A stretch of 64,000 nucleotides of DNA from IMGVR_UViG_3300030098_004828:181647-245646; one strand, 5' to 3'. Counted from the first letter of the stretch, positions 29,305 to 45,891 are shown. Numbers and translations are program-made. The notes: generated from the sequence alone by a model not told the origin.

Positions 29305-29312
29305 TATATTTG
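29305..29312 (+). promoter_or_regulatory. Bacteroidota -7 promoter element TATATTTG, 3 nt before ATG 29316
   Basis: Exact TAnnTTTG match in a 16-bp intergenic gap. Confidence 0.5.
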
Positions 29313-29315
29313 CAT

Positions 29316-32300
29316 ATGAAATGTTATAATAGAAATTCAGGAGAGTATCAAGAACTATACAAAAAGTATGGATCATATCTTAAGACAGACATGCTTATTG
29401 ATGAATATCAAGCTGTTCATAAAACAGATATAATTCCTACTATACAAGACGTTGCACAATTACAAAAAACTAAAAGGACTCAATTCAGTTTAAAGAAAAA
29501 AGAACTTTCTAAAGCAATTATAGCAAATCTTAGAAACAAAGGGTATATACGTAAACGTAATGGTCAATGGTGGATAGTATCCAATAAACAATATGGATAC
29601 AATGATTATGATTTTGATCCCGCTACATTTAGACGTAATGCAGAAGCTATCAAAGCTTATTTACGTTTATGGAATATTCCAAAAGAGTTTTTAATTCTTG
29701 AATTTGGTACAAGAAAAAAGTACCGTGGTTATGATAACAATCATCCATCATTAAGAGCTGCTGAAATTATTCAATGGGGAAGAATAGAATTTGATAAAGA
29801 TGCTTTAACCCTAGAAGATACACTTCCAGAAATGAGAAGTAAAAATACAACACATATTAACATGCTTTTAGAACATTTGAAAAAAGTGTTTCCTCAAATT
29901 GGTATGGATATTGTAAGTGTTGCAGAAGCAAAAGAATATTATGAATCTTTACCTGCATCACAACAAATGGTTCCATTTTCTCAAATTAAAAGTTATATAT
30001 ATGATGGACGTGCTAAAATTATAAAAGGAAGAGTAACAGCTGAAACAGCTGTAGAAGAAGTATTACACCCTTTTGTAAATGCATTGATGATAGAAAATCC
30101 TGCTTTAACTAAAGCTTTATTAAAAGAAGCTGAAGAAAACTTTCCTGTTTTAGCTCAAGAAATAATAGAAGCATATAGTGATAAAAGAGGATTTACTAAT
30201 AGAGACAGACAAAATGAATTACTTACACAAGCATTGTCTAGACATTTTAATGAAGAGTTTGAAGGGAAACCAACAAGAGGTTGGAGAGAAAAAATATTAG
30301 AACTATTACAATGGTTAGCAAAACATGTATCAGATATATGGAAATATGTATCAGGTAATGAGTTAGTACTTACTGCAGGAATGATAAATGAAAAAACATC
30401 AATGAGTGATCTTGCTAGATTATTAAATACAAAAGACTTACAATTTAAATTGGATGAAAGAGCTATTAAAAATGATGGTAAGATTCAATTTAAATTAAGT
30501 AAAAGATTACAAGATATCTTAGATAGAAGATTTGCAAATGCAACTGATGCACAAAACAAAACAAAAGAGAAACTTTTTCATCAAGGAAAGGTAAGTAAAG
30601 AAGAGATTGATATACTTTCTGCTACTGGTGTAAATCCTGTAGATGGAACTAAAACACCACTTACCATTCTAGATAAAGGAAAAGATAATAAACAACATGT
30701 ATATAGAAATATAGCTACAGGAGATATAGGTACCTCTGTAACAAGTCTTATTAATGGGGAGTTTGTACAAGAATATCCTGTTGGACCTAATGAAACTTTA
30801 GATGATGTTTTAAATACATATGGTCTTAAGATGGAAGAGTTAATGCTTGCAAATAGAATGACAGAGCAAGAATTAAAACAAGCATTTAAAAAAGGAAAAA
30901 ATAAAATTGGACGTATTCAAATTCCTAGAGGAAATGAATTTGCAATAAATAGAGAAATAGGTGAAGACTTTGATAACATTATGAACGGTTTAGCTGAAGG
31001 ATTACCTTGGAATGAGATTAAAGAAGATATGACTTTTGAAAGAGTACCAGAAGCTTTAGCTGAAAAATTTTATAATCAAGTTTTAGATTTATTATACAAT
31101 GAAGTAACAAGTACACCAAACTGGTTTTCAAGAGGTGCAATTGTAGTTCCACAAGTTGTAGTTTCAAATATAATTAATACAGGAGAACTTAATTCAAAAG
31201 GACAACCTATACATAGATTTGTAGCAGGAACTATAGATCTTTTGGTAATAAATGAAGACGGAAGTGTATTTCCTGTAGATCTTAAAACAAGTTGGACAAG
31301 TATATCTGATCCTGCATATAATAAAGGATATCCCGTAGGTCCTGGTAGTATACTTTATGATCCCAGTAAATCACAATCAGAACAAAGAAAACTTTCTAAA
31401 AAACAAAGACATGGTGCACAGGTAAATGTATATGGAAGACTATTAGAAAATTCTGGATATGATGTAAGGGGTAAACAAACAAATGCTGATCTTAGAGCTA
31501 TTACATTTCATTTTCAAGTTAAATTAGATAAAAACAATGAAAAGTTAGTTGATTATAATTATGATGGAAGTAAGAATCATGTTCCTGGTCATTTTGATGA
31601 TATAGCAGAAAAAATTGCACCATATCAAGTAGATAAAAAAAGACAAAAGCAAGTTCAATCAGAAAGTGTAGATCAGTATCTTGAAGAAGAAGACAATAGT
31701 AAACAACTAGCAGAAGAAGAAATAATTGCTTCAGATACATATCAAGCTATATTTGAAGTAATGGATCAGTTTCAGCAACACTTAATATCAAGAAGAAAAG
31801 CTGTTGATAGATTAAGAGAGTCTGTTAAACTAATGGGAACTAAAGCTCAAGAAATAGAGAAGATAGATTTTGCAATATCTGCTATAACTTTAGCAATGAG
31901 AGATGCAAAAGTTGATGTATTATATACTGAACTTCTTAGAGATGCTATAAAACAATTAGATAGCTTTTTAGAATATATAGATCCTGCAAGAGGAAATGCA
32001 ACTCATCCAGAATTTATTTCTAAAGTTGTAAACTTTCAAAGAACATTAGAAGGATTTCAAGGTTTAACAAAACTTACAAAGAATGAAGGTTTAACTAATG
32101 AACAACTTAAATTAAAAGACACACTTCAAACAAAATTAACTGAGATAGCAGATGGAGGAGATTCTAAAATAAATTTAGCTATAGATGATTATGTTAGAAC
32201 TCTTGTTAGAAATGAATCATCTAGAGATTTTGATGATCAAGATTTAGATCTATTGATGCGAAGAGGACAAGATATAGGAATGGCAATTTATTATACTGGT

Positions 32301-35270
32301 GATATGGCCACGCAAAGAGATACACTTCTTGCATTAATGGATAAAATATATAAAAGACAAAGACAAAAAGTAATTGATGCTGTAATCTTAAGAAACTCAG
32401 AAATAAAAAAAGCTGCATCTAAATTAGAAAAATTAAGCGGGGGAAAAGTTGATTATAGTTTTATGTTAAGTTATGATCCTGAAGGTAACTTTACAGGTAG
32501 ATATGTTAAAGAAGTAGGACGTACATATTATGATAAACTAACCAAACTTAGAGAACAATTAACTGATATAGATGGTGTTTGGAAAGAGTATGTATATAAT
32601 GCAGATACATCTTGGTATGGTACAAAAGAAGGTCAAGAAGCTTTAAAACGTAATAAAGAGATACATGCTGCTAGGCAAAAGTTGCGTGAGTTTATGCAAC
32701 CTGAAAGAGTTATAGATGGTGTTCCACAAGATGGTTTAAATCATAAATATACTGCAGAGTTTAAAGAAGCTAGAGCAAAGTATCAAATTTTCAAACCTTA
32801 TAAAGGAGGTAAAGGTGGAAGATGGGTTAAAGCAGATGGTATATCTAAAGAAGAATACCAACAGTTTTTATTAAAGTATTATGATACTGTAGATTATAGT
32901 AGAGCTATATATGATCAGCAAGGAAATTTTACAGGAATGGTTCAACCAGATAGTGATTATTTTCCAAAAAGAGAGTTTACAGAAATAAGAACTGATTCTA
33001 CAATAGATGGTAAAAGTATAAAGGATGAAAAGTATGTAAAGCTTATGGAAACTGATCCTGCTGCTATGACAGAATTAGAAAAAGCACAAAAAGAATTTTA
33101 TGAAATGTATATAAAACATTTTGAAAATGACTTATTACAGAAACTTCCTCCATCAGTTATGGATCAAATGATTGGAAGAGTGCCTACAATTAAAGATAAT
33201 TTATATAATGATCTTAAAAAGAAAGGACCATTTTTTGTTAGGTTATGGGCAAAAATGACAAGAAGTATTAAGAACTTTTGGCAAACAACCTCAATTGCTA
33301 GAAAAGTTACTACAGATGAAAATGGTAATATAATAAATACTCTTCCTATTTATTATGTTGGTAAACCAAGAACAGAAAAAGAATTAGCTGATATTGAAGA
33401 TGCAATAAATAAACTTGATGCTGAATATAAAGCGCTTGATGATCCTAAACCAAAAGATGAAGATGCCTATAGAACTAAAAGAGGTGAGCTTATAGAAAAA
33501 AGAATGTCTTTACAAACAAGACCTACTGTAAATGAACTTCAAATGGATATAGCAGACAGCCTTATGAGATTTAGTATGATGGCTGAAAACTATGAGATCA
33601 TGGGTCAGATTGAAGATACTTTACATGCAATGCTTAAAGTTATTAAGCAAAGACAATATACTCCAGCTAGTGGTGAAAAATTAAGATCTATGGTTGGTGG
33701 TGTTATGAAAACTGTTGGTAGAAGAGCAACTGATGATTTAGAAGATCCTTTAATTGTTCAAAGAGCTAAGAAGTTTATGAAAATGGTTTATTATGATAAT
33801 GATAAAACAACCAAAGATATGTTTGATAAATTATCAGATGCATTAATAAGTTATACATCTTTAACTTATGTAGGTTTTAATCCATTTGGTAACTTTAATA
33901 ACTATATGGTTGGTAGAATGTCTAATTTTATAGAGACTGCTGGTGGTATGTATTATGATAGAAGAGCTGCTGGAAGAGCTATTATGGAGTTTAATAAAAG
34001 AGCAATACCAGATTTTATAAGATCTGTAGGTCATAGAACTTATTTAACTGAAAAATTAGGTATGGCTGCTGGACAATATGAAGACTATATACCTCAAAGT
34101 AAATATGAAGCAATGGTTGATTTCTTTAGAATGATGGATGCTAAAGCTGATATACGTGAAACAATAGGAAACAAAGGTAAAGATGGTGGTTGGGAAAGAT
34201 TTAAAGGATGGGGTTATATGATACAGGATGCTGCAGAATATAATGTACAAACTAAAGTAGGTATGTCAATCCTTATGACAATAAGAGCTGTAAAGCTTGA
34301 TGAAAATGGTGACATTGCAGAAGATATGTCTTTATATGATGCTCTTGATAATGATCCTCAAACTGGAGAAGTAAAATTAAAAGATGGTTTTACTCATATT
34401 CAAGAGTATAGAAATGGTAAATTAAGAACTAGAAAAAATAAAGAAGGAAAAGAAGTTGCTAGATTAAAGGAGTGGAATAATGATACTAGATATGATATTA
34501 GAAATAATATACGTGAAGTAAATAAACAAATACACGGTAACTATGCATATGAAGATAGAACTATAATGCAAACTATGGCTTTAGGTAGATTGGCAATGCA
34601 GTTTCATAAATGGGTTGCTCCAACTATTAAAGCTAGGTTTAGACCAGAATATTATGATGAAAACTTAGGATGGGTTGAAGGTAGATATTTAACAGGATGG
34701 AGTTTTATGAAATATGCTGTTACTAATTTAAGAGAAGGACGTAATGTGCTTAGAAATTGGAAAGCACAACAAGGTGCAAAAGGTGAATATAAAGTAAGAA
34801 ATTTAAAAAGAAATATAGGAGATATAACTGTAGTATTAGCTTCAATATTCTTAAAGATAATTTTAACAGCTATGCTTAAAGGCGGAGATGCAGATGATGA
34901 TGAGTCAGCATTACAAAGAAAATTAGAAAATGTTTTACTCTATCAATTAGATAGACAGAAACAAGAATTCATGATGTTCTGGCCTATATTAGGAGCTGAA
35001 GAATTATTTAAATTAAGTAAGTCCCCTTTCTCTTCATTAAGAACATTAGAAGAATTAGCTGAAGCTGGAGGTGTTACATTTAGTACTATAACTTTAGGTT
35101 TAACAAAATCTAAAGAAGATTTTTTAGCAGATAAAAGAGTTGTATATCAAAGAGGAAGTAGAACAGGACAATGGAAAATAAACAAAAATTGGATGGATGC
35201 TGTTCCACTATTATATGCTTTTGAAAAATGGAAAAAGTATATGGATCAACAAGATTTTCATGTTAAATAA
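29316..35270 (+). CDS. Large ejection/polyvalent protein (about 1984 aa): degenerate zincin, PD-(D/E)XK nuclease with LysM insert, helical C-terminus
   Basis: EEVLH at 30054-30068; SVT..AGTIDLL..VDLKT..QVNVY at 30735-31433; LysM-like YPVGPNETLDDVLNTYGLKMEELMLAN..IQIP at 30774-30926. ATG 29316 is preferred over the track's TTG 29310. Confidence 0.7.
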   Translation: MKCYNRNSGEYQELYKKYGSYLKTDMLIDEYQAVHKTDIIPTIQDVAQLQKTKRTQFSLKKKELSKAIIANLRNKGYIRKRNGQWWIVSNKQYGYNDYDFDPATFRRNAEAIKAYLRLWNIPKEFLILEFGTRKKYRGYDNNHPSLRAAEIIQWGRIEFDKDALTLEDTLPEMRSKNTTHINMLLEHLKKVFPQIGMDIVSVAEAKEYYESLPASQQMVPFSQIKSYIYDGRAKIIKGRVTAETAVEEVLHPFVNALMIENPALTKALLKEAEENFPVLAQEIIEAYSDKRGFTNRDRQNELLTQALSRHFNEEFEGKPTRGWREKILELLQWLAKHVSDIWKYVSGNELVLTAGMINEKTSMSDLARLLNTKDLQFKLDERAIKNDGKIQFKLSKRLQDILDRRFANATDAQNKTKEKLFHQGKVSKEEIDILSATGVNPVDGTKTPLTILDKGKDNKQHVYRNIATGDIGTSVTSLINGEFVQEYPVGPNETLDDVLNTYGLKMEELMLANRMTEQELKQAFKKGKNKIGRIQIPRGNEFAINREIGEDFDNIMNGLAEGLPWNEIKEDMTFERVPEALAEKFYNQVLDLLYNEVTSTPNWFSRGAIVVPQVVVSNIINTGELNSKGQPIHRFVAGTIDLLVINEDGSVFPVDLKTSWTSISDPAYNKGYPVGPGSILYDPSKSQSEQRKLSKKQRHGAQVNVYGRLLENSGYDVRGKQTNADLRAITFHFQVKLDKNNEKLVDYNYDGSKNHVPGHFDDIAEKIAPYQVDKKRQKQVQSESVDQYLEEEDNSKQLAEEEIIASDTYQAIFEVMDQFQQHLISRRKAVDRLRESVKLMGTKAQEIEKIDFAISAITLAMRDAKVDVLYTELLRDAIKQLDSFLEYIDPARGNATHPEFISKVVNFQRTLEGFQGLTKLTKNEGLTNEQLKLKDTLQTKLTEIADGGDSKINLAIDDYVRTLVRNESSRDFDDQDLDLLMRRGQDIGMAIYYTGDMATQRDTLLALMDKIYKRQRQKVIDAVILRNSEIKKAASKLEKLSGGKVDYSFMLSYDPEGNFTGRYVKEVGRTYYDKLTKLREQLTDIDGVWKEYVYNADTSWYGTKEGQEALKRNKEIHAARQKLREFMQPERVIDGVPQDGLNHKYTAEFKEARAKYQIFKPYKGGKGGRWVKADGISKEEYQQFLLKYYDTVDYSRAIYDQQGNFTGMVQPDSDYFPKREFTEIRTDSTIDGKSIKDEKYVKLMETDPAAMTELEKAQKEFYEMYIKHFENDLLQKLPPSVMDQMIGRVPTIKDNLYNDLKKKGPFFVRLWAKMTRSIKNFWQTTSIARKVTTDENGNIINTLPIYYVGKPRTEKELADIEDAINKLDAEYKALDDPKPKDEDAYRTKRGELIEKRMSLQTRPTVNELQMDIADSLMRFSMMAENYEIMGQIEDTLHAMLKVIKQRQYTPASGEKLRSMVGGVMKTVGRRATDDLEDPLIVQRAKKFMKMVYYDNDKTTKDMFDKLSDALISYTSLTYVGFNPFGNFNNYMVGRMSNFIETAGGMYYDRRAAGRAIMEFNKRAIPDFIRSVGHRTYLTEKLGMAAGQYEDYIPQSKYEAMVDFFRMMDAKADIRETIGNKGKDGGWERFKGWGYMIQDAAEYNVQTKVGMSILMTIRAVKLDENGDIAEDMSLYDALDNDPQTGEVKLKDGFTHIQEYRNGKLRTRKNKEGKEVARLKEWNNDTRYDIRNNIREVNKQIHGNYAYEDRTIMQTMALGRLAMQFHKWVAPTIKARFRPEYYDENLGWVEGRYLTGWSFMKYAVTNLREGRNVLRNWKAQQGAKGEYKVRNLKRNIGDITVVLASIFLKIILTAMLKGGDADDDESALQRKLENVLLYQLDRQKQEFMMFWPILGAEELFKLSKSPFSSLRTLEELAEAGGVTFSTITLGLTKSKEDFLADKRVVYQRGSRTGQWKINKNWMDAVPLLYAFEKWKKYMDQQDFHVK

Positions 35271-37639: not shown

Positions 37640-37652
37640 TTTGTATATTATA
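37640..37652 (+). promoter_or_regulatory. Putative late promoter TTTGTATATTATA
   Basis: Intergenic copy of the repeated motif. A second variant, TTTAGTATGCTAATA, is at 37661. Confidence 0.55.
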
Positions 37653-37692
37653 GTATATACTTTAGTATGCTAATATAATAAAAAATTTTAAT

Positions 37693-38041: not shown

Positions 38042-38962
38042 ATGCTTAATTTAGTTAATAGTCTTGGTATACAATCTGATGGTAGAATACAATATGATCC
38101 TGCCCAAATTGCTACACATGATAAAGATGCTAGTTTGACACTTACAGGATGGTTTGATTTTAATGATGGATCTACAATTTTTGAAGACACAGGAGGAACA
38201 GATGCTGCAGAAGATGGTGATAATATAGCACGAATAAATAATAAAGCTTATGATGGATTAGGAGCAAGTTCAGCATCAATAAATGAATTTGCATCTCAAG
38301 GAACTGCTGGTGCAAGACCTGTATGGACTGCCCCTAGTGGTCTTAATGCTGGTTATGCAACATTTGCTGATGATGTTTTAGAATCTAGTGTACTACAAGG
38401 AAATGCATCTACTGGCAGAATGGGTGGTGTTAATTTTAATCCTCAAGGGTTTACATTTATGGCAGTTGTAAAAGGTAATCCAACAGGTATAACCGGACCT
38501 GCTGAACCTATATTCACATTTACTGACCGAACTAGATCTGATTCAGGACTTGAGTATGGAGCATCTGCACTTGGAAATGATATTGTATTTAATTTTAATA
38601 CTAAAATGAATACACCTTTTTCAACTAGTACCGTTAGACCTAATACTGATGTAACATGTATTACATTAACAGGTGGTACATCAACTAGTCCAACTAATAG
38701 TTTAAAGTGGTATATAGATGGTGATCTAGAAAACACTGATACAACAAATTACTCTGCATTTGGACGTGATTTAACTCAGAATGATCCTTCTGTTGGCTTT
38801 AATATAGGATGGTGTTTTAGTCTTAATAGGTCTGTTACTAAAGGTTGGAATGGAAGAATTTATGAAATTGTTATGTATGATAAGTGTTTAAGTGATTATC
38901 AACGGCATCAATTACATAGATATGTAGGAACAAAGTATGATATTAGTATGACAATATCTTAA
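38042..38962 (+). CDS. LamG/concanavalin-A-like jelly-roll protein (putative tail/adsorption protein)
   Basis: LTGWFDFND..DGDNIARINNK..QGTAGARPVW..WNGRIYEIVMYDKCLSD..LHRYVGTKY. Confidence 0.8.
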   Translation: MLNLVNSLGIQSDGRIQYDPAQIATHDKDASLTLTGWFDFNDGSTIFEDTGGTDAAEDGDNIARINNKAYDGLGASSASINEFASQGTAGARPVWTAPSGLNAGYATFADDVLESSVLQGNASTGRMGGVNFNPQGFTFMAVVKGNPTGITGPAEPIFTFTDRTRSDSGLEYGASALGNDIVFNFNTKMNTPFSTSTVRPNTDVTCITLTGGTSTSPTNSLKWYIDGDLENTDTTNYSAFGRDLTQNDPSVGFNIGWCFSLNRSVTKGWNGRIYEIVMYDKCLSDYQRHQLHRYVGTKYDISMTIS

Positions 38963-39539: not shown

Positions 39540-39824
39540 ATGGCAAAAGAATTAAATGAAGACACAGGTTTTAAGGTAAGTATAAAAACACTTATAGGAA
39601 TAGGGGTTGCAATGGCTACAGTTATTGGTATGTGGTTTGCACTTCAAGCAGACATTGAAGAAGCTAAAATGCTTCCAGAACCACCAGCACCAGATGTAAC
39701 AAGAATGGAGTTTGATATGAAGGATAAAAATATACGTCTCACTATTGAGAATACTCAAGATGATGTGACAGAAATTAAAGAAGATTTAAGACGTATAGAA
39801 GACAAAATTGATGATTTAAAATGA
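39540..39824 (+). CDS. Single-TM coiled-coil membrane protein
   Basis: TM segment IKTLIGIGVAMATVIGMWFALQ, then a Pro linker and coiled coil. Confidence 0.55.
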   Translation: MAKELNEDTGFKVSIKTLIGIGVAMATVIGMWFALQADIEEAKMLPEPPAPDVTRMEFDMKDKNIRLTIENTQDDVTEIKEDLRRIEDKIDDLK

Positions 39825-40144
39825 AAAACCTAACATATATATTTTTACTATTTGCAGCTACAGTTAGTGCTCAAATAGAAGTTGTTCAATATAATGCGGG
39901 ATGGAATTCTAGCAATGATGTTGAATGGGTAGAAGAACTTACAGATTGTGAAATAAATTATATTGATATAGCTGCTAAGCCAAAACAGCAAGCAAAAAAT
40001 AAAATAGAAGTAGTTCCTACTATCATAATATTTGATGAAGGTGAGGAAATAGAAAGATTTCAAGCAGATATATCTTTTAGCATAAAAGCAACAAGAGAAG
40101 AAATACAAGAAATAATAGATGAATTAATTGTAAATAAATTTTAA
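39821..40144 (+). CDS. Exported thioredoxin-fold protein lacking CxxC
   Basis: Sec signal (..AATVSA|Q), then VVQYNAGWN (replacing the WCxxC position) and IEVVPTIIIFDEGEEIERF (cis-Pro strand). Confidence 0.65.
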   Translation: MKNLTYIFLLFAATVSAQIEVVQYNAGWNSSNDVEWVEELTDCEINYIDIAAKPKQQAKNKIEVVPTIIIFDEGEEIERFQADISFSIKATREEIQEIIDELIVNKF

Positions 40145-40145
40145 A

Positions 40146-40241
40146 ATGAGAAAATTTTTATGTAAATTATTGTATATAGTTAGTTTTAAAACTGTATGTT
40201 GGCACATCTGTAAAGAAGATAAGTGCTGTAAAGAAAAATAA
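40146..40241 (+). CDS. 31-aa Cys-rich micro-ORF MRKFLCKLLYIVSFKTVCWHICKEDKCCKEK
   Basis: Hand translation; starts 1 nt after the previous stop. Confidence 0.45.
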   Translation: MRKFLCKLLYIVSFKTVCWHICKEDKCCKEK

Positions 40242-40283
40242 CCACAAGTTATAACTAGTTAATAAATTTAAAAAAAGAATAAT

Positions 40284-40754
40284 ATGGCTTCAATAAAGAC
40301 AACTTTTTCTATTATTGGTACAGGTGCCTCTTCAACAAATCCAATTAGCATTACACCACAAGCTGCTACAATTACTGTAACAGATCCTGAAGAAACAGGA
40401 ACATTAGATGTTAGTGCAACTGGAGTTTCTGGAGATGAACAGATTATAATTAATCCTACTGCTTCAGATAGTACAGCAATGGGTGCAACTGCTGCTGGTT
40501 CTTGGGTTTACTTAAGAAACGGTGCTACAACTGGTTCATCTTTACTAAAGGTTCAAGCTTACTTAAAAGCAGCTGAGCAAGCAGGTGGAGCAGCAGCTAT
40601 GTGGGTTACAATATGTTCACTTAAACCAGGTGAATTTATGTGGTATAGCCCAGTTAATGTTACTGATGGTGGAACAGATATAAAAAGAGGTTGTAAGGTA
40701 GTTAATTCAACTGCTACTGCGACAACTTGTGAATTCGCAAGGTTTAATAGATAA
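40284..40754 (+). CDS. Small beta-rich putative virion protein, paralog 1
   Basis: WVYLRN..SLKPGEFMWY motif shared with 40773 and 45968. Confidence 0.55.
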   Translation: MASIKTTFSIIGTGASSTNPISITPQAATITVTDPEETGTLDVSATGVSGDEQIIINPTASDSTAMGATAAGSWVYLRNGATTGSSLLKVQAYLKAAEQAGGAAAMWVTICSLKPGEFMWYSPVNVTDGGTDIKRGCKVVNSTATATTCEFARFNR

Positions 40755-40772
40755 TTTTAAAAAATAATAATA

Positions 40773-41153
40773 ATGGCAAATTTAATATGTACATTTACCG
40801 CTCAAGAAACAAGTCTGGGACCTGATAAAGTAACTATTAGTGAGTTAAATAAAAGTTTTGTTGTAGAAACTCCTACTATTTCAGCTGGTGCTACCGTTGC
40901 TGCAGGTGTAACTAAAACAATTTTTACTGCTCCAACTAAGGATGCTTATATGTTCCTTAAAATGACAGGTGATAGTGGAGACACCGGTTGTGTTGTTGAT
41001 GTTAATGCTCAGCCCGCTGCTACATTAAGACATAATGATTTTTGTTTTTTCAGAGTTCCTGGTGGTTTAGCAGTAACTGTTGAAAATAAAGCAGGATCTA
41101 CTTCTACTATTGAGTGGTCAACTTGGGAATGTGAGACTCAAGTAGCACGATAA
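40773..41153 (+). CDS. Small beta-rich putative virion protein, paralog 2
   Basis: AYMFLKMTG..TLRHNDFCFFRVP. Confidence 0.55.
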   Translation: MANLICTFTAQETSLGPDKVTISELNKSFVVETPTISAGATVAAGVTKTIFTAPTKDAYMFLKMTGDSGDTGCVVDVNAQPAATLRHNDFCFFRVPGGLAVTVENKAGSTSTIEWSTWECETQVAR

Positions 41154-41165
41154 TACTAATCTACA

Positions 41166-44100
41166 ATGAAGTCCTTTATAAGACATAGTCTAATATGGAT
41201 TGTGTTATTCCTGTGTTCTACAGTGAATGCTCAATCCATAGACTCTTGGATAGAGATAGAATTTCAATTTGATAATTATGCAGAAGAAGTATCATGGAGT
41301 TTATATAATTCCACTGATACTATTTCTATTGATACAGGTTTTTACACAGCAGGTCAACCTAATGCATATGAATTTATAGAATTAGATTCAGGAGATTATA
41401 CATTTCAATTAATGGATTCATGGGGTGATGGTTTATCATGGCCTCAAGATGGTTATTGTTTAATATCCAACGAGTGTCAAGATACTCTATTTTATGCATC
41501 AGGTAATTATGGTTTAGGTTTAATTGAATCTCTTACAATTGCTCCATGTGCTCCTCCAGAGCCTGCAGTAATTGATTGTATGGATGAAAACGCAACAAAT
41601 TATAATTCAGATGCTGATGTAAATGATCAGTCTTTATGTGAATATCCACCATGTGAAGGTTGGGGTGAACCTTTTGTAGATCAGATATGTGATGGTGGTC
41701 AAGCACTTCTTTATTGGAATTGGGAAGCTTCAGATAATCCTAATTGCAATGTAATTCAAATAACTTATAGCGGTGAAAATACTAACTCTTATAACTTTGA
41801 TGTTAATATAGACAATGGTATATGGGGTGTTTATACTGGCAATGGTCAGATGCCTCCTAATTGGGAAGAAGAATATTCATTCCAAGCAATGTTTGCTGAT
41901 AGTACTATGTCAGATACTTTAACGTATACACCATATCCGTGTACACAAGGATGTACAAATGATGATGCTCCTAATTATAATCCATGGGCTACAGTAGACG
42001 ATGGGTCATGTGGAGGTCAAGCATGTGATGTAGGATATACTTCTATAACAATAGATATAACTTTAGATAATTGGCCAAGTGAAACAGGTTGGTCATTAAT
42101 TAGTGGTGGTGTAATAGATGAACACATTGATGGAGATTATAATTATCAAGATATAGGTCAAACATTTTCATATTCTTACTGTGTAATGGAAGCCGGATTT
42201 GAATTTATTATATCAGATACATATGGTGATGGTTTAGCTGGTTCAACTACAGGCGGAGATCTGGATGGAGATGTTCTTATTAGAGGTTGTAATGGAGATA
42301 CAATAACTCAATTATCTAACGGTAATTGGTTAAACGCAGCTCAAGAAAATGTAGGTGTTGGTTTTGGTAGTGTAGCATATTCAGGATGGCAACAAGCTAT
42401 TATATGTGAAACAAATGATGTTGCAGGATGTACTAATCCAATATATCAAGAATTTAATCCAGAAGCTGTTATAGATGACGGCTCATGTGTTACAGAACAT
42501 ATATATGGTTGTATAAATGAAAATGCATTTAACTATGATGAAAATGCAACAGCAATGGATATATATCCTAACTGTAATTATGAACTGTGGATAGGAGATG
42601 CAGCTGCTGATGGTTGGGGTAATTCATTCTTAGGAGTTGTACAAGGTGACAATCAATGGACATTTACAATGGGTCCAGGAGAATATGAACAAACTTTTCC
42701 TATTTGGTTAGAGACAGATAAACCTGTAAAAATATTTTACTTTGAGGTAGGTGGAGCACAAACTCCTCCAGAAGAAGTGGCTTTTCAAACACTACATAAT
42801 TCGTTTAAATTAACTAATGCTGATGATGTTATATTAATGTATGAAGGATGGAATCCTTTTGCAAACAATGGTCAAGGTGCACTTCAAGCTTTTGAACCTC
42901 CATTCTTTCAAACATATCAAGCAATGCCTTTCTGTGGTACACTTTGTATCCCTACAGTGGAAGGTTGTTTAGATGCTACAGCACTAAACTATAATGAAGA
43001 AGCTAATACAGATGACGGTAGTTGTATAGAGATTATAGAAGGTTGTACTAATGAATTAGCTTTTAACTATGATGAAGAAGCTAACTATGATGACGGGTCA
43101 TGTGAAGCTGTAGTTGTTGGATGCATGGATGAGATAGCATGGAACTACAATGAGGATGCTAATACAGATGGTGGTGATTGTATATACTTAGGTTGTACTG
43201 ATTCTTCAGCATGTAATTTTAATCCAAATGCAAATGCAGATAGTGGAGGGTGTACTTATGCTGATCAGTATTATAACTGCAGTGATGTATGTATAAATGA
43301 TGCTGACTCAGATGGAATTTGTGATGAACTTGAAATACTAGGATGTACTAGTGTAGCTGCTATTAACTATATGCCGGAAGCAACTGATGATGATGGTAGT
43401 TGTGTTGGTATAGTATATGGCTGTACAGACCCTACTGCTTTTAATTATGACGCTACAGCTAATACAGACAATGGTTCATGTGTGCCTGTAATATACGGGT
43501 GTATAGATAGTACAGCATTTAACTATGATCCAGCTGCTAATACAGATAATGGAACTTGTGTAGAATTTGTATACGGTTGTACTGATACTACAGCTCTTAA
43601 CTTTGATCCATTAGCAAATACATTAGATAACTCTTGTTGTTATCTTGGAGGATGTATGGATTCTACTGCATTAAACTATGATGAAGATGCTTGTTTTGAT
43701 GATGGTAGTTGTATAGTTATAATAGAAGGATGTGCAGATCCTAATGCATACAACTATAATCCGCTAGTTAATTTACCAGACAATAGTACGTGTCTTTATG
43801 ATGCAGGTTGTTATAGTGGACCTGGTGAACCTTATTGGTTAAATGATCCTTGCTATGCTTGGGTTATAGATATAGATAGTTATTGTTGTACAGAAATTTG
43901 GGATGAGACTTGTCAGTCTATGTATAACTATTGTGAAGATGGCTGGCCTGTTGATTTAGATGAATTATCAGGTAGTGATATAATTGTATACCCTAATCCT
44001 ACAGCAAATACATTTACTATAGAAACAAGATTAGATATTGATGTAGAACTATATAATATAGTAGGAGAACTTATAGAAACAGATAATATTAAAAGAATAG

Positions 44101-44186
44101 ATATATCAGATTATCCTGATGGAATATATAATTTGATTATTACATATGATAAAATAAGAATAACAAAAAAAATAATTAAACTATGA
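41166..44186 (+). CDS. T9SS (Por) type-A cargo protein with about 14 GCxDxxAxNY..DGSC repeats
   Basis: Signal peptide (..STVNA|Q). C-terminal IIVYPNP..VELYNIVGELI..IDISDYPDGIYNLII..TKKIIKL (43980-44186) is a canonical T9SS type A CTD. Confidence 0.88.
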   Translation: MKSFIRHSLIWIVLFLCSTVNAQSIDSWIEIEFQFDNYAEEVSWSLYNSTDTISIDTGFYTAGQPNAYEFIELDSGDYTFQLMDSWGDGLSWPQDGYCLISNECQDTLFYASGNYGLGLIESLTIAPCAPPEPAVIDCMDENATNYNSDADVNDQSLCEYPPCEGWGEPFVDQICDGGQALLYWNWEASDNPNCNVIQITYSGENTNSYNFDVNIDNGIWGVYTGNGQMPPNWEEEYSFQAMFADSTMSDTLTYTPYPCTQGCTNDDAPNYNPWATVDDGSCGGQACDVGYTSITIDITLDNWPSETGWSLISGGVIDEHIDGDYNYQDIGQTFSYSYCVMEAGFEFIISDTYGDGLAGSTTGGDLDGDVLIRGCNGDTITQLSNGNWLNAAQENVGVGFGSVAYSGWQQAIICETNDVAGCTNPIYQEFNPEAVIDDGSCVTEHIYGCINENAFNYDENATAMDIYPNCNYELWIGDAAADGWGNSFLGVVQGDNQWTFTMGPGEYEQTFPIWLETDKPVKIFYFEVGGAQTPPEEVAFQTLHNSFKLTNADDVILMYEGWNPFANNGQGALQAFEPPFFQTYQAMPFCGTLCIPTVEGCLDATALNYNEEANTDDGSCIEIIEGCTNELAFNYDEEANYDDGSCEAVVVGCMDEIAWNYNEDANTDGGDCIYLGCTDSSACNFNPNANADSGGCTYADQYYNCSDVCINDADSDGICDELEILGCTSVAAINYMPEATDDDGSCVGIVYGCTDPTAFNYDATANTDNGSCVPVIYGCIDSTAFNYDPAANTDNGTCVEFVYGCTDTTALNFDPLANTLDNSCCYLGGCMDSTALNYDEDACFDDGSCIVIIEGCADPNAYNYNPLVNLPDNSTCLYDAGCYSGPGEPYWLNDPCYAWVIDIDSYCCTEIWDETCQSMYNYCEDGWPVDLDELSGSDIIVYPNPTANTFTIETRLDIDVELYNIVGELIETDNIKRIDISDYPDGIYNLIITYDKIRITKKIIKL
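42960..43800 (+). repeat. Coding tandem array of about 27-aa Cys/Asp/Asn repeats (GC[TM]D..A.NY...A..DDGSC)
   Basis: Ten copies in this interval, four more upstream in the same ORF. Divergent at DNA level. Confidence 0.85.
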
Positions 44187-44374
44187 AATATTTAGCAGCA
44201 TTGTGGGTTTTAGTAATTGTAGGTTGCGGATTATTTAATCCTGCAAAATATAATCCTAATCCAAGACCAGTAGTAGAAGAGTGTTGTGCTAAAGATTCAA
44301 TAAGAATTGATACAATAAGATTAACAAATGGTGTTGATCATATTATTATGTTAGATACAGTAAAAATTAAATAA
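44183..44374 (+). CDS. Small lipoprotein (63 aa)
   Basis: MK, hydrophobic core, lipobox IVG|C at residue 15. Overlaps the T9SS gene stop (ATGA). Confidence 0.65.
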   Translation: MKYLAALWVLVIVGCGLFNPAKYNPNPRPVVEECCAKDSIRIDTIRLTNGVDHIIMLDTVKIK

Positions 44375-44385
44375 AATTTAAAATT

Positions 44386-44637
44386 ATGCCACAAGGAAAA
44401 GGAACTTATGGGTCTCAAGTAGGTAGACCAAGAAAAACACAAAAAGGAGGTGCTTCTTGTTCATTAAAAGTTAAAGGTGTAAACATTTGTTCATTAACCA
44501 AAAGACAACAAACTTCATTGCAAAAACATGCAGAACATCATACTAAAAAACATATTCAAGCTATGGTAAACGCAATGAACAATGGTGCTAGTTTTACTCA
44601 ATCACATAAAGATGCAATGCAAAAAGTAGGAAAATGA
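44386..44637 (+). CDS. Small basic protein: MPQGKGTYGSQVGRP module fused via QKGG to a LTKRQ..KHAEHH..KH module
   Basis: Both halves resemble recurrent small basic proteins of aquatic phages. Confidence 0.6.
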   Translation: MPQGKGTYGSQVGRPRKTQKGGASCSLKVKGVNICSLTKRQQTSLQKHAEHHTKKHIQAMVNAMNNGASFTQSHKDAMQKVGK

Positions 44638-45692
44638 GAATAATTTTATACATATTATTACTTTTATCATTTACGATAAATGCACAAGAAGAAAGTAAAT
44701 TTAAAAAAGAACTTAAAAAAACTTTTAAATTTTCTACATTCTATGCTGCAGTAAATGGTGGTACTTCTATTTCAGATCAAAATGTATATTCTGTATTAGA
44801 TCAACTTCAAACCGATGTAATAGAAACTCCATTTGATTACGCACTAACTCTAGGTGTAAGAAAGATACAAAGATTTGGATACGAAAACAAGGCTAACACA
44901 TTCAAAGACGGTACAGAAACTTCATACTCTGATGCCGCTACAATAGGACGAACTAAAGGATTTGAGTTTTTATTTGAGATGGATTACCAAAGAAGATTTG
45001 GTGATACATATATAGATCAGAATCACTTTCTACGATACTTAGCAGATAAATGGGTTGTTAAGGTGGAGTATTTACAAGATGGCTTTGCTGATGTAGAATA
45101 CATGGAAGCATCACAACGATATAGACAAAAGATAGGTAAGAGATTTTCACTTACTGCAGGGACAGCACAAAGGATCTCCGAACCTTATGGATTTGATCCG
45201 TTAGCTCAGTGGTTGTTATCCAACGGGAACTTACACTACACAAACCTTGCTTTAGAGGAAGGCTACTCAATTGGTTTTGCACCAACAGGAATAGAATACT
45301 TAGACCCTAGTGGAGCGGTCGTGGCTACAAGCAGTGAAGTTTGGGAAGAGGTGGTAATACCGCAAATGCTTGATGACTATGTTAAAGCAAGTAAAGATGC
45401 ATTACCAGTACAATGGTGTCACTCTTTAGTAATTGGCTTTGACTATTATTACTATACAAAAAAGATCTGGTTACACTCATGGGGTAATGTGCTTCCTGTT
45501 CATCTTAACACAGGAGGAGAATACTCATATCACAATTTTAATAATGGTAATTGGATAGATTATTCTGGTGGTTTAATATTTGGATATAAGATCAATAAGA
45601 ACTTAGGTATCTTTGTTGAGGGTAAATATAACAAATATTGGAATAGAAACTGGCATGATTTCAAGTTTGGAATAAATTATATTATTCTTTAG
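44634..45692 (+). CDS. Outer-membrane beta-barrel protein, Bacteroidota type (352 aa)
   Basis: Sec signal (..FTINA|Q), alternating aromatic strands and a terminal strand WHDFKFGINYIIL. Confidence 0.7.
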   Translation: MRIILYILLLLSFTINAQEESKFKKELKKTFKFSTFYAAVNGGTSISDQNVYSVLDQLQTDVIETPFDYALTLGVRKIQRFGYENKANTFKDGTETSYSDAATIGRTKGFEFLFEMDYQRRFGDTYIDQNHFLRYLADKWVVKVEYLQDGFADVEYMEASQRYRQKIGKRFSLTAGTAQRISEPYGFDPLAQWLLSNGNLHYTNLALEEGYSIGFAPTGIEYLDPSGAVVATSSEVWEEVVIPQMLDDYVKASKDALPVQWCHSLVIGFDYYYYTKKIWLHSWGNVLPVHLNTGGEYSYHNFNNGNWIDYSGGLIFGYKINKNLGIFVEGKYNKYWNRNWHDFKFGINYIIL

Positions 45693-45706
45693 ATTTTCCT
45701 ATTTTT

Positions 45707-45718
45707 TTTGTATATTAT
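45707..45718 (+). promoter_or_regulatory. Putative late promoter TTTGTATATTAT
   Basis: Intergenic copy of the repeated motif. Confidence 0.55.
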
Positions 45719-45741
45719 TATATAACCAAAACCGTAAACAT

Positions 45742-45891
45742 ATGAACTGGATAAACAGTTGGCGTGAAGGTAACAAAAAGAATATTGTTGATTTCACAGT
45801 AAGATTTGGGGTATTTACCCTATTTGAATTAAAATGGAACCCTGGTGTAAACTTTAGGTTCTTAATATTAAACTTTGGATTTGAAATATAA
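45742..45891 (+). CDS. 49-aa protein MNWINSWREGNKKNIVDFTVRFGVFTLFELKWNPGVNFRFLILNFGFEI
   Basis: Hand translation; downstream of the promoter motif; amphipathic beta pattern. Confidence 0.6.
   Translation: MNWINSWREGNKKNIVDFTVRFGVFTLFELKWNPGVNFRFLILNFGFEI

What the first reader, a model, noticed from the sequence alone, without database searches (positions are those of the whole stretch)
41166..44186. Phage-encoded type IX secretion cargo protein
The 1006-aa ORF has a Sec signal, beta-sandwich modules of the type D.[YW]..E..W..D.[WY]GDG, about 14 Cys/Asp-rich repeats and a canonical T9SS type A CTD. Established: such CTDs route proteins through the Bacteroidota T9SS, usually to surface anchoring. 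Inference: the phage uses the host T9SS to display a protein on the infected cell, for example for superinfection exclusion, receptor masking, aggregation or grazer avoidance. It sits in the late arm under phage-type promoters, so it is not host flanking DNA.
Basis: partly seen in the sequence, partly recalled or inferred. Interest (0 to 1): 0.75.

Follow-up and report, generated by a model that had tools for sequence, protein, structure and literature searches.

The report
Phage-encoded type IX secretion cargo protein
A widespread group of uncultured marine crAss-like phages carries a conserved gene for a large, very acidic, disulfide-rich binding-type protein that has every sequence and fold signal needed to be exported by its Bacteroidota host's Sec and type IX secretion systems, so the phage probably puts its own protein on or outside the infected cell, for a purpose still unknown.

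Summary

The gene is truly phage-encoded. The genome is a distant marine crAss-like phage of about 120 kb. The 245.6-kb record is two sister genomes joined. The gene is syntenic in both sisters (dN/dS 0.22) and in 6 of 8 terminase-selected relatives. Contigs from independent metagenomes bridge both gene edges. At least 980 homolog clusters exist, nearly all with the CTD.

No catalytic domain or motif was found. The mature protein has 155 Asp+Glu, 4 Lys+Arg and 53 Cys. The N-terminal tip domain evolves fast (dN/dS 0.80) and is decoupled from the conserved core. An exported, probably outer-membrane protein co-occurs with it.

Export by Sec then T9SS is strongly inferred. Surface display versus release, timing and biological role are untested. 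Phage T9SS cargo was noted before (Bellas 2020; de Jonge 2019), so this is a new, abundant member of a known kind.

The parts
41166..44186 (+). Whole gene: 1006-aa phage-encoded T9SS type A cargo protein (stop codon at 44184-44186)
   Evidence: ORF. Family of at least 980 clusters. dN/dS 0.22 against the sister-genome ortholog.
41166..41231 (+). Sec (signal peptidase I type) signal peptide, aa 1-22. Predicted cleavage after A22, exposing the invariant Q23 (Bacteroidetes Q-rule).
   Evidence: Sequence features. Helix at residues 2-21 in the AF2 model. Q23 invariant in 75/75 members. Q-rule described in PMC5837995 and PMC10653852.
41235..41555 (+). D1, the N-terminal beta-sandwich tip domain (aa 24-130) with the 'D.Y..E..W ... 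D.WGDG' motif. It is the hypervariable part.
   Evidence: pLDDT 82-89. dN/dS 0.80 and 56% identity between sister genomes, against 0.08-0.25 elsewhere. Decoupled from the core across the family. Matches an Aequorivita M4 peptidase accessory module at E 1e-13.
41577..41639 (+). Cys/Asp-rich unit 1 (aa 138-158)
   Evidence: Pattern match. C138 and C158 conserved in the family.
41643..41945 (+). D2, a fibronectin type III-like domain (aa 160-260)
41952..42011 (+). Cys/Asp-rich unit 2 (aa 263-282)
   Evidence: Pattern match. G262, C263, N272, P273, A275 and G280 invariant.
42027..42401 (+). D3, the second 'D.WP.E..W ... D.YGDG' beta-sandwich (aa 288-412), followed by a Gly/Asp-rich loop whose key residues (D351, G354, D355, G356, G359, G363, G364, D367, G368) are invariant
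   Evidence: Homologous to D1 (E 3e-7). Matches Ekhidna and Aequorivita M4 peptidase modules. Invariant columns.
42429..42575 (+). Cys/Asp-rich units 3 and 4 (aa 422-441 and 449-470), variant forms
   Evidence: Read from the sequence. C422, C441 and C449 invariant.
42567..42941 (+). D4, the most conserved beta-sandwich domain (aa 468-592). No named fold match.
   Evidence: AF2 strands in this range. Mean conservation 0.77. dN/dS 0.20.
42957..43805 (+). Stalk of ten tandem ~26-aa Cys/Asp-rich units (aa 598-880), interrupted at about aa 697-725 by a short Cys- and Asp-rich stretch containing D-x-D-x-D-G
   Evidence: Pattern matches. One short strand per unit in the AF2 model. Unit number 3-26 across the family, correlation with protein length r = 0.89. 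The module matches 12,560 cluster representatives. Skip and go-back joints in metagenome contigs fall mainly in the repeat stalk.
43806..43955 (+). Small Cys-rich, partly helical domain (aa 881-930), highly conserved
   Evidence: AF2 helices 895-925. Conservation 0.79. dN/dS 0.10.
43977..44183 (+). T9SS type A C-terminal sorting domain (aa 938-1006)
40161..40176 (+). Promoter-like motif TGTAWATTATTRTATA (preceded by a T-run, followed by TAG) at the head of the gene block that holds the cargo gene
   Evidence: 10 matches against 2.2 expected; 0 of 100 shuffles reach 10. Matches with at most 1 mismatch lie only in + strand intergenic gaps, syntenic in both sister genomes.
45709..45724 (+). Next copy of the same promoter-like motif, marking the start of the following block
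44183..44374 (+). 63-aa ORF with a lipoprotein-type signal (…IVGC). Its ATG overlaps the cargo stop codon (ATGA).
   Evidence: and the sequence. No family hit. Association with the cargo is by position only.
44634..45692 (+). 352-aa exported protein (signal peptide with Q after the cleavage site), probably an outer-membrane beta-barrel. It co-occurs with the cargo gene.
   Evidence: dN/dS 0.083. Present in all 6 cargo-bearing relatives, directly after the CTD in 3 of them, and absent from G008, which lacks the cargo. Next to or near the cargo in L009 and L007. Atlas: all 100 nearest clusters viral; the nearest Pfam-bearing ones are OM barrel families, a lead only. Not PorP/SprF.
39821..40144 (+). 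107-aa exported protein with a thioredoxin-like fold but no CxxC. It is kept immediately upstream of the cargo in a distant relative.
   Evidence: Weak thioredoxin hits below cut-off. The homolog in L007 at 7577-7990 abuts the cargo gene.

Best explanation
This is a conserved accessory gene of a lineage of uncultured marine crAss-like phages (genome about 120 kb) that infect T9SS-bearing Bacteroidota, most likely Flavobacteriales.

The product is a non-enzymatic, binding-type (adhesin-like) protein.

Proposed route; every step is inferred from sequence and fold, none is shown experimentally:
1. Sec export and signal peptidase I cleavage before Q23, which the host glutaminyl cyclase would convert to pyroglutamate.
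2. Folding in the periplasm, where its 53 cysteines can form the paired disulfides of the 14 small units.
3. Recognition of the C-terminal type A CTD by the host T9SS translocon, and transport across the outer membrane.
4. Removal of the CTD by the PorU-type sortase, followed either by anchoring to anionic LPS or by release.

The result would be a very acidic rod. A conserved base (D2-D4, the stalk of disulfide-stapled units and a Cys-rich domain) carries a fast-evolving N-terminal tip domain, D1, which would be the ligand-contacting end.

The most likely purpose is to change what the infected cell's surface binds or exposes. Masking or occupying a surface receptor, or excluding other phages, is my favoured guess. 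That last step is speculation.
For: Phage origin:
- Terminase, portal and major head protein are in the same genome half.
- The terminase matches only crAss-like phages, all with Bacteroidota hosts where named.
- The gene is syntenic in both sister genomes, in L007, L008 and L009 and in 6 of 8 terminase-selected genomes.
- Both gene edges are bridged by contigs from independent studies.

Secretion signals:
- Signal peptide with invariant Q23.
- CTD above both curated cut-offs.
- CTD fold matches the NucA CTD bound in the T9SS complex.
- The family profile matches solved structures almost only through CTDs.

Extracytoplasmic nature: 53 Cys in conserved pairs, 155 D+E against 4 K+R.

No enzyme: no Pfam or NCBIfam catalytic domain, and HExxH in 0 of 75 members.

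Binding-type architecture:
- FN3 plus beta-sandwich modules that cellular T9SS peptidases use as accessory domains.
- Fold matches to strings of extracellular Ig/FN3 domains and to the Ca-binding adhesin SiiE.

Selection: whole gene dN/dS 0.22 and D1 0.80. D1 identity falls to 0.42 in pairs whose core is at least 0.9 identical.

Host phylum:
- 441 cellular relatives of the modules, nearly all Bacteroidota.
- Giant proteins carrying the stalk repeat come from Flavobacteriales MAGs.
- A related phage contig was binned with a Flavobacteriales MAG.
Against: - No experiment and no host: secretion, CTD cleavage and localisation are all inferred.
- No dedicated signal-peptide predictor was run.
- The gene is not universal in the lineage. 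G008 (97% complete) lacks it, and G006 has only a shortened CTD, so it is dispensable for the phage cycle.
- Domain-level fold matches for D1, D3 and D4 are generic, so 'binding' rests on architecture and analogy.
- dN/dS 0.80 in D1 could reflect relaxed constraint rather than diversifying selection. No site-level test was done.
- Evidence of transcription in nature is weak: one metatranscriptome run holds 6% of the sampled words.
- CTDs can be incompatible between species (PMC11285876), so a passing HMM does not guarantee secretion in the real host.
Confidence: 0.72

Rival explanations
1. The route (Sec then T9SS) is the same, but the protein is released as a soluble extracellular factor rather than anchored. 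For example, it could bind particles, polymers, cations or other cells or phages in the surrounding water.
For: T9SS cargo is either released or anchored after PorU processing (PMC11285876). Nothing in the sequence tells the two fates apart. The extreme acidity would suit a soluble cation- or particle-binding protein.
Against: The long rigid stalk with a variable distal tip, and the variable number of stalk units (3-26), look like a device for holding a tip at a distance from a surface. A freely diffusing protein would bring little benefit to the phage that encodes it.
Confidence: 0.3
2. It is a virion structural protein, such as a tail fibre or decoration protein, and the C-terminal domain is just an Ig-like fold with no secretion role.
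For: - Ig-like and FN3 domains are common on phage particles; BFVD fold hits include tail proteins.
- The gene lies on the same strand as structural-type genes.
- It shares a promoter-like motif with blocks that hold PHROG 'virion structural protein' genes.
- A variable tip is also typical of receptor-binding proteins.
Against: - A conserved cleavable signal peptide with invariant Q at +1.
- 53 cysteines in conserved pairs need an oxidising compartment, whereas virions assemble in the cytoplasm.
- The CTD passes curated T9SS cut-offs and matches translocon-bound CTDs.
- No PHROG structural family matches.
- The gene is absent from G008, a 97%-complete relative.
Confidence: 0.06
3. It is host DNA that entered the record through mis-assembly, or a recently captured host gene with no function for the phage.
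For: - All its modules (D1/D3 type, Cys units, CTD) are shared with cellular Bacteroidota proteins.
- The record itself is an assembly artefact, two genomes joined.
- The gene is missing from some relatives.
Against: - Same position and neighbours in two sister genomes and in many independent contigs from different studies.
- Purifying selection at dN/dS 0.22.
- The full N-terminal architecture was found only on viral contigs. The best 'cellular' hit, L009, is a phage contig binned in a MAG.
- The genome junction lies about 57 kb before the window starts.
Confidence: 0.03
4. It is a secreted enzyme, as the UniProt label 'Putative peptidase' on a 47%-identical viral relative implies.
For: The BFVD hit A0A218ML01 is named 'Putative peptidase'. 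The modules also occur in M4 and M43 peptidases and in a diatom subtilisin.
Against: - The shared parts are the accessory modules, not the catalytic domains.
- No peptidase family matches at E up to 1.
- HExxH occurs in 0 of 75 members, and the protein has only 4 His.
- D4 and the Cys-rich domain are unassigned, so an unknown activity cannot be fully excluded.
Confidence: 0.05

Closest known systems
T9SS-CTD cargo genes of 'Cryophage', an uncultured phage of glacier cryoconite holes (Bellas et al. 2020, PMC7468147)
   Same: The genes are phage-encoded and carry T9SS type A sorting domains. The authors inferred that the phage hijacks the host T9SS. The cargo varies between phage variants. The suggested roles, competition or superinfection exclusion, are similar.
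   Different: - The Cryophage cargoes are an endoglucanase, a GH39 glycoside hydrolase and a PA14-domain protein. The protein here has no catalytic domain and a different architecture.
- That paper called Cryophage 'a unique occurrence'. Here the gene belongs to a family of at least 980 clusters in marine crAss-like phages, where it is nearly a core gene.
- Neither case has been tested experimentally.
T9SS sorting-domain ORFs next to BACON-repeat ORFs in gut phage 'cluster 2' (de Jonge et al. 2019, PMC6949934)
   Same: Phage contigs of Bacteroidota-infecting lineages encode proteins with a T9SS sorting domain, found by annotation only.
   Different: Those are gut phages with BACON-repeat context and a different protein family. 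No signal peptide, conservation or selection analysis was reported.
Cellular T9SS-secreted M4 and M43 metallopeptidases of marine Bacteroidota (Aequorivita soesokkakensis L070, Ekhidna lutea L078, Lewinella cohaerens L068)
   Same: They have the same export signals (signal peptide plus type A CTD). They carry the same unannotated 'D.YP.E..W ... D.YGDG' beta-sandwich module and FN3 domains between the catalytic domain and the CTD.
   Different: They have catalytic domains and propeptides. The phage protein consists only of the accessory-type modules plus a long Cys-unit stalk.
Giant Ca2+-binding or repeat adhesins such as Salmonella SiiE, and the cell-surface gliding adhesin SprB of Flavobacterium johnsoniae (SprB from my own knowledge)
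   Same: They work alike in outline: long, acidic, repeat-built extracellular rods that hold a binding end away from the cell. SiiE is among the fold matches. SprB is also a T9SS cargo.
   Different: SiiE is secreted by a type I system and built from BIg domains. SprB has a type B CTD and needs SprF. There is no sequence relationship, and the matches are generic, with low TM-scores.
Phage-encoded envelope proteins that block receptors or exclude superinfecting phages, such as the T5 Llp lipoprotein and the T4 Imm/Sp proteins (my own knowledge)
   Same: This is the closest functional analogy for the favoured role: a phage protein exported to the envelope of the infected cell that changes its surface properties.
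   Different: Those are small inner- or outer-membrane proteins exported by Sec/Lol, not a 1000-aa T9SS cargo. There is no sequence or fold similarity. The analogy is untested.

Membership tests
T9SS type A CTD cargo (TIGR04183 / PF18962) | The C-terminal domain matches the curated HMM above its cut-off | tested here: met
   TIGR04183 36.9 bits on the whole protein and 43.1 bits on the last 99 aa, cut-off 23. PF18962 40.8 bits, cut-off 27.
T9SS type A CTD cargo (TIGR04183 / PF18962) | The domain lies at the extreme C-terminus of the protein | tested here: met
   The match covers aa 941-1005 of 1006.
T9SS type A CTD cargo (TIGR04183 / PF18962) | N-terminal Sec signal peptide for export to the periplasm | tested here: met
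   n/h/c regions can be read from the sequence. A helix at residues 2-21 appears in the model. The signal peptide is present across the family, with invariant Q at +1. No dedicated predictor was run.
T9SS type A CTD cargo (TIGR04183 / PF18962) | Compact Ig-like beta-sandwich fold like solved CTDs | tested here: met
T9SS type A CTD cargo (TIGR04183 / PF18962) | Conserved CTD elements: the PNP region, a Gly at the beta3-beta4 loop, and a C-terminal strand with a conserved Lys (PMC11285876) | tested here: met
   P943, N944, P945, G967, G986, Y988 and K1005 are near-invariant in 75 members. Matching G967 and K1005 to the published positions is by inspection, not by structural alignment.
T9SS type A CTD cargo (TIGR04183 / PF18962) | Secretion depends on the T9SS, and the CTD is removed by PorU | not testable with these tools
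   This needs expression in wild-type and T9SS-mutant Bacteroidota.
T9SS type A CTD cargo (TIGR04183 / PF18962) | The producing cell has a T9SS | not testable with these tools
   The host is unknown. Indirect evidence only: crAss-like terminase relatives all have Bacteroidota hosts, the modules are shared with Flavobacteriales and Saprospiraceae, and the signal peptide follows the Q-rule.
T9SS type B CTD cargo (SprB type) | A type B CTD model matches, with an adjacent PorP/SprF-family gene | tested here: not met
   An NCBIfam scan at E up to 1 returned only type A related models. No PorP/SprF match (TIGR03519, PF11751) anywhere in the genome at E up to 10.
crAss-like phages (Crassvirales and relatives), for the genome that carries the gene | Terminase, portal and major capsid protein related to those of crAss-like phages | tested here: met
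   TerL: all 154 matches are crAss-like or Bacteroidota phages, at about 25% identity. The MCP matches Cellulophaga phage phi14:2 (Crassvirales) over 41% of its length, and a Leptolyngbya phage. PHROG portal, TerL and MCP families match. The relationship is distant. The giant virion RNA polymerase was not identified.
Secreted metallopeptidase (database label 'Putative peptidase' on a relative) | A catalytic domain or the HExxH zinc motif | tested here: not met
   No peptidase family matches at E up to 1. HExxH occurs in 0 of 75 members.
PorP/SprF, PorV or PorQ-type T9SS outer-membrane component, for the co-occurring 352-aa neighbour | Sequence membership in a T9SS outer-membrane protein family | tested here: not met
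   No significant Pfam or NCBIfam hit for three orthologs at E up to 10. TIGR03519 and PF11751 are absent from the genome. No PDB sequence match.

The most novel reading that the evidence does not exclude
A globally distributed lineage of marine crAss-like phages carries a conserved 'envelope-remodelling' gene set. It comprises a T9SS-exported, hyper-acidic rod protein with a hypervariable tip, a dedicated outer-membrane barrel protein, a small lipoprotein and an exported thioredoxin-fold protein. With it, the phage rebuilds the surface of the infected flavobacterial cell. The outer-membrane partner would act as a phage-supplied anchor or adaptor for the T9SS cargo. The variable tip would track a variable host or competitor-phage ligand, through receptor masking or exclusion. 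This would be the first phage system shown to use the T9SS, and the first with its own accessory component.
Probability: 0.15. Interest if true: 0.8.

Novelty: new member of a known kind. Interest (0 to 1): 0.55.

Why it matters
T9SS-bearing Flavobacteriia are major degraders of algal organic matter in the sea, and their phages shape that turnover. This gene family is abundant in seawater metagenomes: at least 980 homolog clusters, found in runs from a dozen or more studies between 2014 and 2025. It is conserved in a whole phage lineage, yet every public record calls it 'hypothetical protein'.

If the phage really exports its own protein through the host T9SS, infection changes the surface of the cell before lysis. 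That could affect which other phages can attach, how cells stick to particles, or how they are grazed.

No phage-encoded T9SS cargo has been tested experimentally. The strong signals here (signal peptide obeying the Q-rule, a canonical CTD, purifying selection) make this a good candidate. The secretion step can be tested in Flavobacterium johnsoniae without the unknown natural host.

The analysis also defines two unannotated but very common protein modules. It also shows that a viral database record rated 100% complete is in fact two genomes joined.

Tried and rejected
- **Single-sequence AlphaFold2** of the whole protein failed (mean pLDDT 36). It was replaced by an alignment-based run.
- **Foldseek of the whole model against the PDB** gave only generic strings of Ig/FN3 domains with TM below 0.3. 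No specific function could be drawn for D1, D3 or D4.
- **PHROGs**: no family matches the target.
- **Cultured and deposited phages** (INPHARED): no match by megablast or tblastn.
- **Close relatives in 185,579 species genomes**, using the single N-terminal sequence: none. The alignment-based scan found module-level relatives only.
- **The 352-aa neighbour as a PorP/SprF, PorV or PorQ component**: rejected at sequence level.
- **Sigma-70-type promoters**: not enriched (56 found against 63.7 expected). A different, phage-specific motif was found instead.
- **Co-evolution of the D1 tip with the fast-evolving putative receptor-binding gene** (38042-38962): not testable, because that gene is not conserved in the other genomes.
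- **Transcription in nature**: one marine metatranscriptome run holds only 6% of the sampled words, and the single read-laying run had already been used. Inconclusive.
- **Pfam and PHROG scans of the giant neighbouring ORFs**: no hits.
- **The 'putative peptidase' label**: considered and rejected.
- **The exported thioredoxin-fold neighbour as a disulfide catalyst for the 53-Cys cargo**: considered and set aside. It has no CxxC motif, and its family hits are below cut-off.
Full report
**1. The observation**

Window 41166-44186 (+) is one ATG-initiated ORF of 1006 aa.
- The N-terminus has two basic residues, a hydrophobic core of about 11 residues and T-V-N-A before Q23. The alignment-based AlphaFold2 model makes residues 2-21 a single helix.
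- The C-terminal 65 residues match the T9SS sorting-domain models above their curated cut-offs: PF18962 40.8 bits against 27, and TIGR04183 36.9 bits against 23, or 43.1 bits when the last 99 aa are scanned alone.
- A strict pattern finds 11 Cys/Asp-rich units of about 20-26 aa.
- The 'D.[YW]..E..W ... D.[WY]GDG' motif occurs in two modules, aa 24-130 and 288-412. They are homologous to each other (E 3e-7).

**2. Anatomy**

The model built from 75 family members has mean pLDDT 74, with 716 residues at 70 or above. It resolves these parts:
- signal helix;
- D1 beta-sandwich (aa 24-130);
- a Cys unit;
- D2 (aa 160-260);
- a Cys unit;
- D3 (aa 288-412);
- two Cys units;
- D4 (aa 468-592);
- a stalk of ten Cys units (aa 598-880), each contributing one short strand;
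- a small, partly helical Cys-rich domain (aa 881-930);
- the CTD sandwich (aa 938-1006).

Searching with the whole model gives only generic strings of extracellular Ig/FN3 domains, including the Ca-binding adhesin SiiE, at low TM-scores.

No catalytic family matches. HExxH is absent from all 75 members. The mature part has 155 Asp+Glu, 4 Lys+Arg and 53 Cys. The label 'Putative peptidase' on a 47%-identical viral relative is therefore not supported.

**3. It is a phage gene**

The window is the last 64 kb of a 245,646-base IMG/VR record. A self-comparison shows the record is two collinear, 70-90% identical genomes joined head to tail near base 124,782. Terminase-selected relatives measure 110-123 kb, so the real genome is about 120 kb.

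The half that holds the window encodes a terminase, a portal and a major head protein. The window itself encodes ribonucleotide reductase, a family A DNA polymerase, an exonuclease and an ATPase.

The terminase matches only crAss-like phages, at about 25% identity. Every named host among those matches is a Bacteroidota species. The capsid protein matches Cellulophaga phage phi14:2, a member of Crassvirales.

The target gene has a syntenic ortholog in the sister genome: 87% amino-acid identity, dN/dS 0.22. A 50%-identical homolog lies among replication genes on a 121.6-kb marine-metagenome contig. A 46%-identical one lies on a phage contig that had been binned with a Flavobacteriales MAG.

Of eight large genomes chosen through the terminase alone:
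- six carry the gene;
- five of those have a CTD above cut-off;
- one (G006) has a shortened CTD;
- two lack the gene.

The stretch 40100-45800 is held by 20 listed marine and seawater metagenome runs from 13 studies, 2014-2025. Contigs with no or few differences bridge the 5' edge (X1 record 1, X2 record 17, X7 record 27) and the 3' edge (X1 record 6, X2 record 21). There is no host-phage chimera at this gene.

**4. Family and modules**

A capped word-based search found at least 980 homolog clusters, nearly all carrying PF18962 and mostly from marine metagenomes. The exhaustive search found 12,560 representatives at E up to 0.001. Most of these match only the Cys-unit region, including giant proteins of up to 6,618 aa, some from Flavobacteriales MAGs.

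The full N-terminal architecture was found only on viral sequences.

The D1/D3 module occurs in 441 cellular loci, nearly all Bacteroidota. Examples are accessory domains of T9SS-secreted M4 and M43 peptidases of Aequorivita, Ekhidna and Lewinella, located between the catalytic domain and the CTD. Pfam annotates neither this module nor the Cys unit.

**5. Host signature**

Q23, the residue after the predicted signal-peptidase site, is invariant. Two neighbouring exported proteins also have Q at that position. In Bacteroidetes, most signal peptidase I substrates expose an N-terminal glutamine that is cyclised to pyroglutamate (PMC5837995, PMC10653852). Phage proteins that obey this rule have been noted in P. 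gingivalis phages (PMC10367356). Together with the crAss-like kinship, the shared modules and the CTD, this places the host in T9SS-bearing Bacteroidota, probably Flavobacteriales. That is an inference; the host is not identified.

**6. Selection pattern**

Between the sister genomes, D1 is 56% identical with dN/dS 0.80, and the next Cys unit has dN/dS 0.53. All other parts are 84-94% identical with dN/dS 0.08-0.25.

Across the family, pairs at least 90% identical over D2-D4 can be only 42% identical in D1. In terminase-selected genomes, D1 is 33-48% identical to the window copy, whereas D4 is 67-69% identical in the two closest ones.

The number of stalk units ranges from 3 to 26 and explains protein length (r = 0.89). 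Metagenome contigs show skip and go-back joints, mainly in the repeat stalk.

A conserved base with a length-variable stalk and a fast-evolving distal tip is the pattern expected of a surface molecule whose tip meets a variable partner. Relaxed constraint on D1 is not excluded.

**7. Neighbourhood**

A 16-nt motif, TGTAWATTATTRTATA, preceded by a T-run, is enriched in the window: 10 matches against 2.2 expected, and no shuffle reaches 10. With at most one mismatch it occurs only in + strand intergenic gaps, four per genome, at syntenic places in both sister genomes. Two copies frame the block 40161-45700. That block holds:
- two small ORFs;
- the cargo gene;
- a 63-aa lipoprotein-like ORF whose ATG overlaps the cargo stop codon;
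- an 83-aa ORF;
- a 352-aa exported protein.

The same motif heads blocks that contain 'virion structural protein' genes. This is compatible with late expression but does not show it.

The 352-aa protein is strongly constrained (dN/dS 0.083). It is present in all six cargo-bearing relatives, directly after the CTD in three of them, and absent from G008, which has no cargo gene. G001, which is incomplete, has a distant copy without the cargo. It also lies next to or near the cargo in L009 and L007. Its nearest Atlas clusters are all viral, and the nearest named ones are outer-membrane barrel families, which is only a lead. It is not a PorP/SprF member by sequence.

An exported thioredoxin-fold protein without CxxC, and a 94-aa membrane protein, also travel with the cargo gene.

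**8. Mechanism**

Shown by computation: the signals, the folds, the conservation and the phage context.

Inferred from established T9SS biology (PMC11285876 and references there): Sec export, periplasmic disulfide formation, CTD-dependent transport through the host T9SS, and CTD removal followed by anchoring or release.

Speculative: the role. I favour a change of the infected cell's surface binding properties, by masking a receptor or excluding other phages. The reason is that the part that varies is the distal tip, as in host-interaction proteins. Adhesion or a released binding factor fit the data about as well.

**9. Comparison with what is known**

Phage-encoded T9SS cargo was reported by annotation in 'Cryophage': an endoglucanase, a GH39 hydrolase and a PA14 protein. 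The authors called it a unique occurrence (PMC7468147). It was also reported in a gut phage cluster (PMC6949934). I found no paper linking Crassvirales and the T9SS and none describing this family. The cultured crAss-like flavobacterial phage phi14:2 has no CTD gene.

The finding is therefore a new, abundant and well-conserved member of a known but untested kind. It differs from earlier cases in that the cargo is non-enzymatic and adhesin-like, has a hypervariable tip, and has co-occurring envelope partners.

**10. Verdict**

- Confidence in the Sec + T9SS route and the binding-type nature: about 0.7.
- Interest: 0.55.

Noticed in passing
whole record G000 (window = G000 181647-245646); junction near G000 124,782: The 245,646-base viral record, rated 100% complete, is two collinear related genomes (about 124.8 kb and 120.9 kb, 70-90% nucleotide identity) joined head to tail. 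Related genomes found through the terminase are 110-123 kb, and one has direct terminal repeats. This is probably an assembly join of two co-occurring strains. It gave a useful natural pair for dN/dS.
   Followed up: partly
window 37642-37657, 40161-40176, 45709-45724; G000 162939 and the syntenic sites 33619, 101107, 103595, 108352: A phage-specific promoter-like motif (T-run, TGTAWATTATTRTATA, then TAG) occurs four times per genome. All copies are on the + strand in intergenic gaps, at conserved positions in both sister genomes, ahead of blocks with structural-type genes. The polymerase that would read it is unknown.
   Followed up: partly
window 44634-45692: A 352-aa exported protein (signal peptide with Q at +1; relatives end in an aromatic residue). 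It is under strong purifying selection (dN/dS 0.083), is found only in viral clusters, and co-occurs with the cargo gene in 6 of 6 cargo-bearing relatives. It is probably an outer-membrane barrel, but it matches no family and its fold was not predicted.
   Followed up: partly
window 39821-40144 (homolog at L007 7577-7990): An exported 107-aa protein with weak thioredoxin-fold matches, below cut-off, and a conserved cis-Pro-type 'VVPT' stretch. It lacks the CxxC active site. It is kept immediately upstream of the cargo gene in a 50%-identity relative.
   Followed up: partly
window 44183-44374: A 63-aa ORF with a lipoprotein-type signal (…IVGC) and a Pro-rich mature part. Its start codon overlaps the cargo gene's stop codon (ATGA), which suggests translational coupling. 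It could be an o-spanin-like or envelope lipoprotein. No family matches.
   Followed up: no
window 38042-38962: A 306-aa protein with a PHROG 'virion structural protein' match. It is 62% identical between the sister genomes with dN/dS 1.19, and has no significant match in six of the eight related genomes checked (one weak match in G001). It behaves like a rapidly replaced receptor-binding protein.
   Followed up: partly
window 12920-29299 and 29310-35270: Giant ORFs of 5459 aa and 1986 aa, preceded by four ORFs of 790-1168 aa. None has a Pfam hit, and none of those scanned has a PHROG hit. The 1986-aa protein is only 35% identical between the sister genomes. By analogy with crAss-like phages they may include tail, muzzle or virion RNA polymerase proteins, but this was not tested.
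   Followed up: partly
window 42957-43805 (aa 598-880) and related proteins P0121-P0269: The ~26-aa unit 'C..D..A.NY...A..DDGSC' is an unannotated but extremely common module. It matches 12,560 cluster representatives at 50% identity, including giant proteins of up to 6,618 aa from Flavobacteriales MAGs, and predicted proteins of marine eukaryotes in AlphaFold DB.
   Followed up: partly
L174 (G006), 373-3228 minus strand: One complete related phage genome has a 951-aa homolog whose CTD is cut down to about 45 residues. It keeps the C-terminal '…IYDDG…RIIKQ' end but has lost the N-terminal PNP part. It scores below the TIGR04183 threshold, making it a natural variant for testing how much CTD is needed.
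   Followed up: partly
L176/L178 (G003) and L177/L179 (G004): Two complete related genomes carry shorter homologs, with open frames of 769 and 875 aa as reported by the search. They match D1 and D3-D4 but not the D2 (FN3) region, so domains have been lost or gained within the family.
   Followed up: no
window 39540-39824: A 94-aa protein with one predicted membrane helix is identical in amino-acid sequence between the sister genomes (dN/dS 0.011) and is conserved next to the cargo cassette in L007. It is possibly a holin-like or envelope protein.
   Followed up: no
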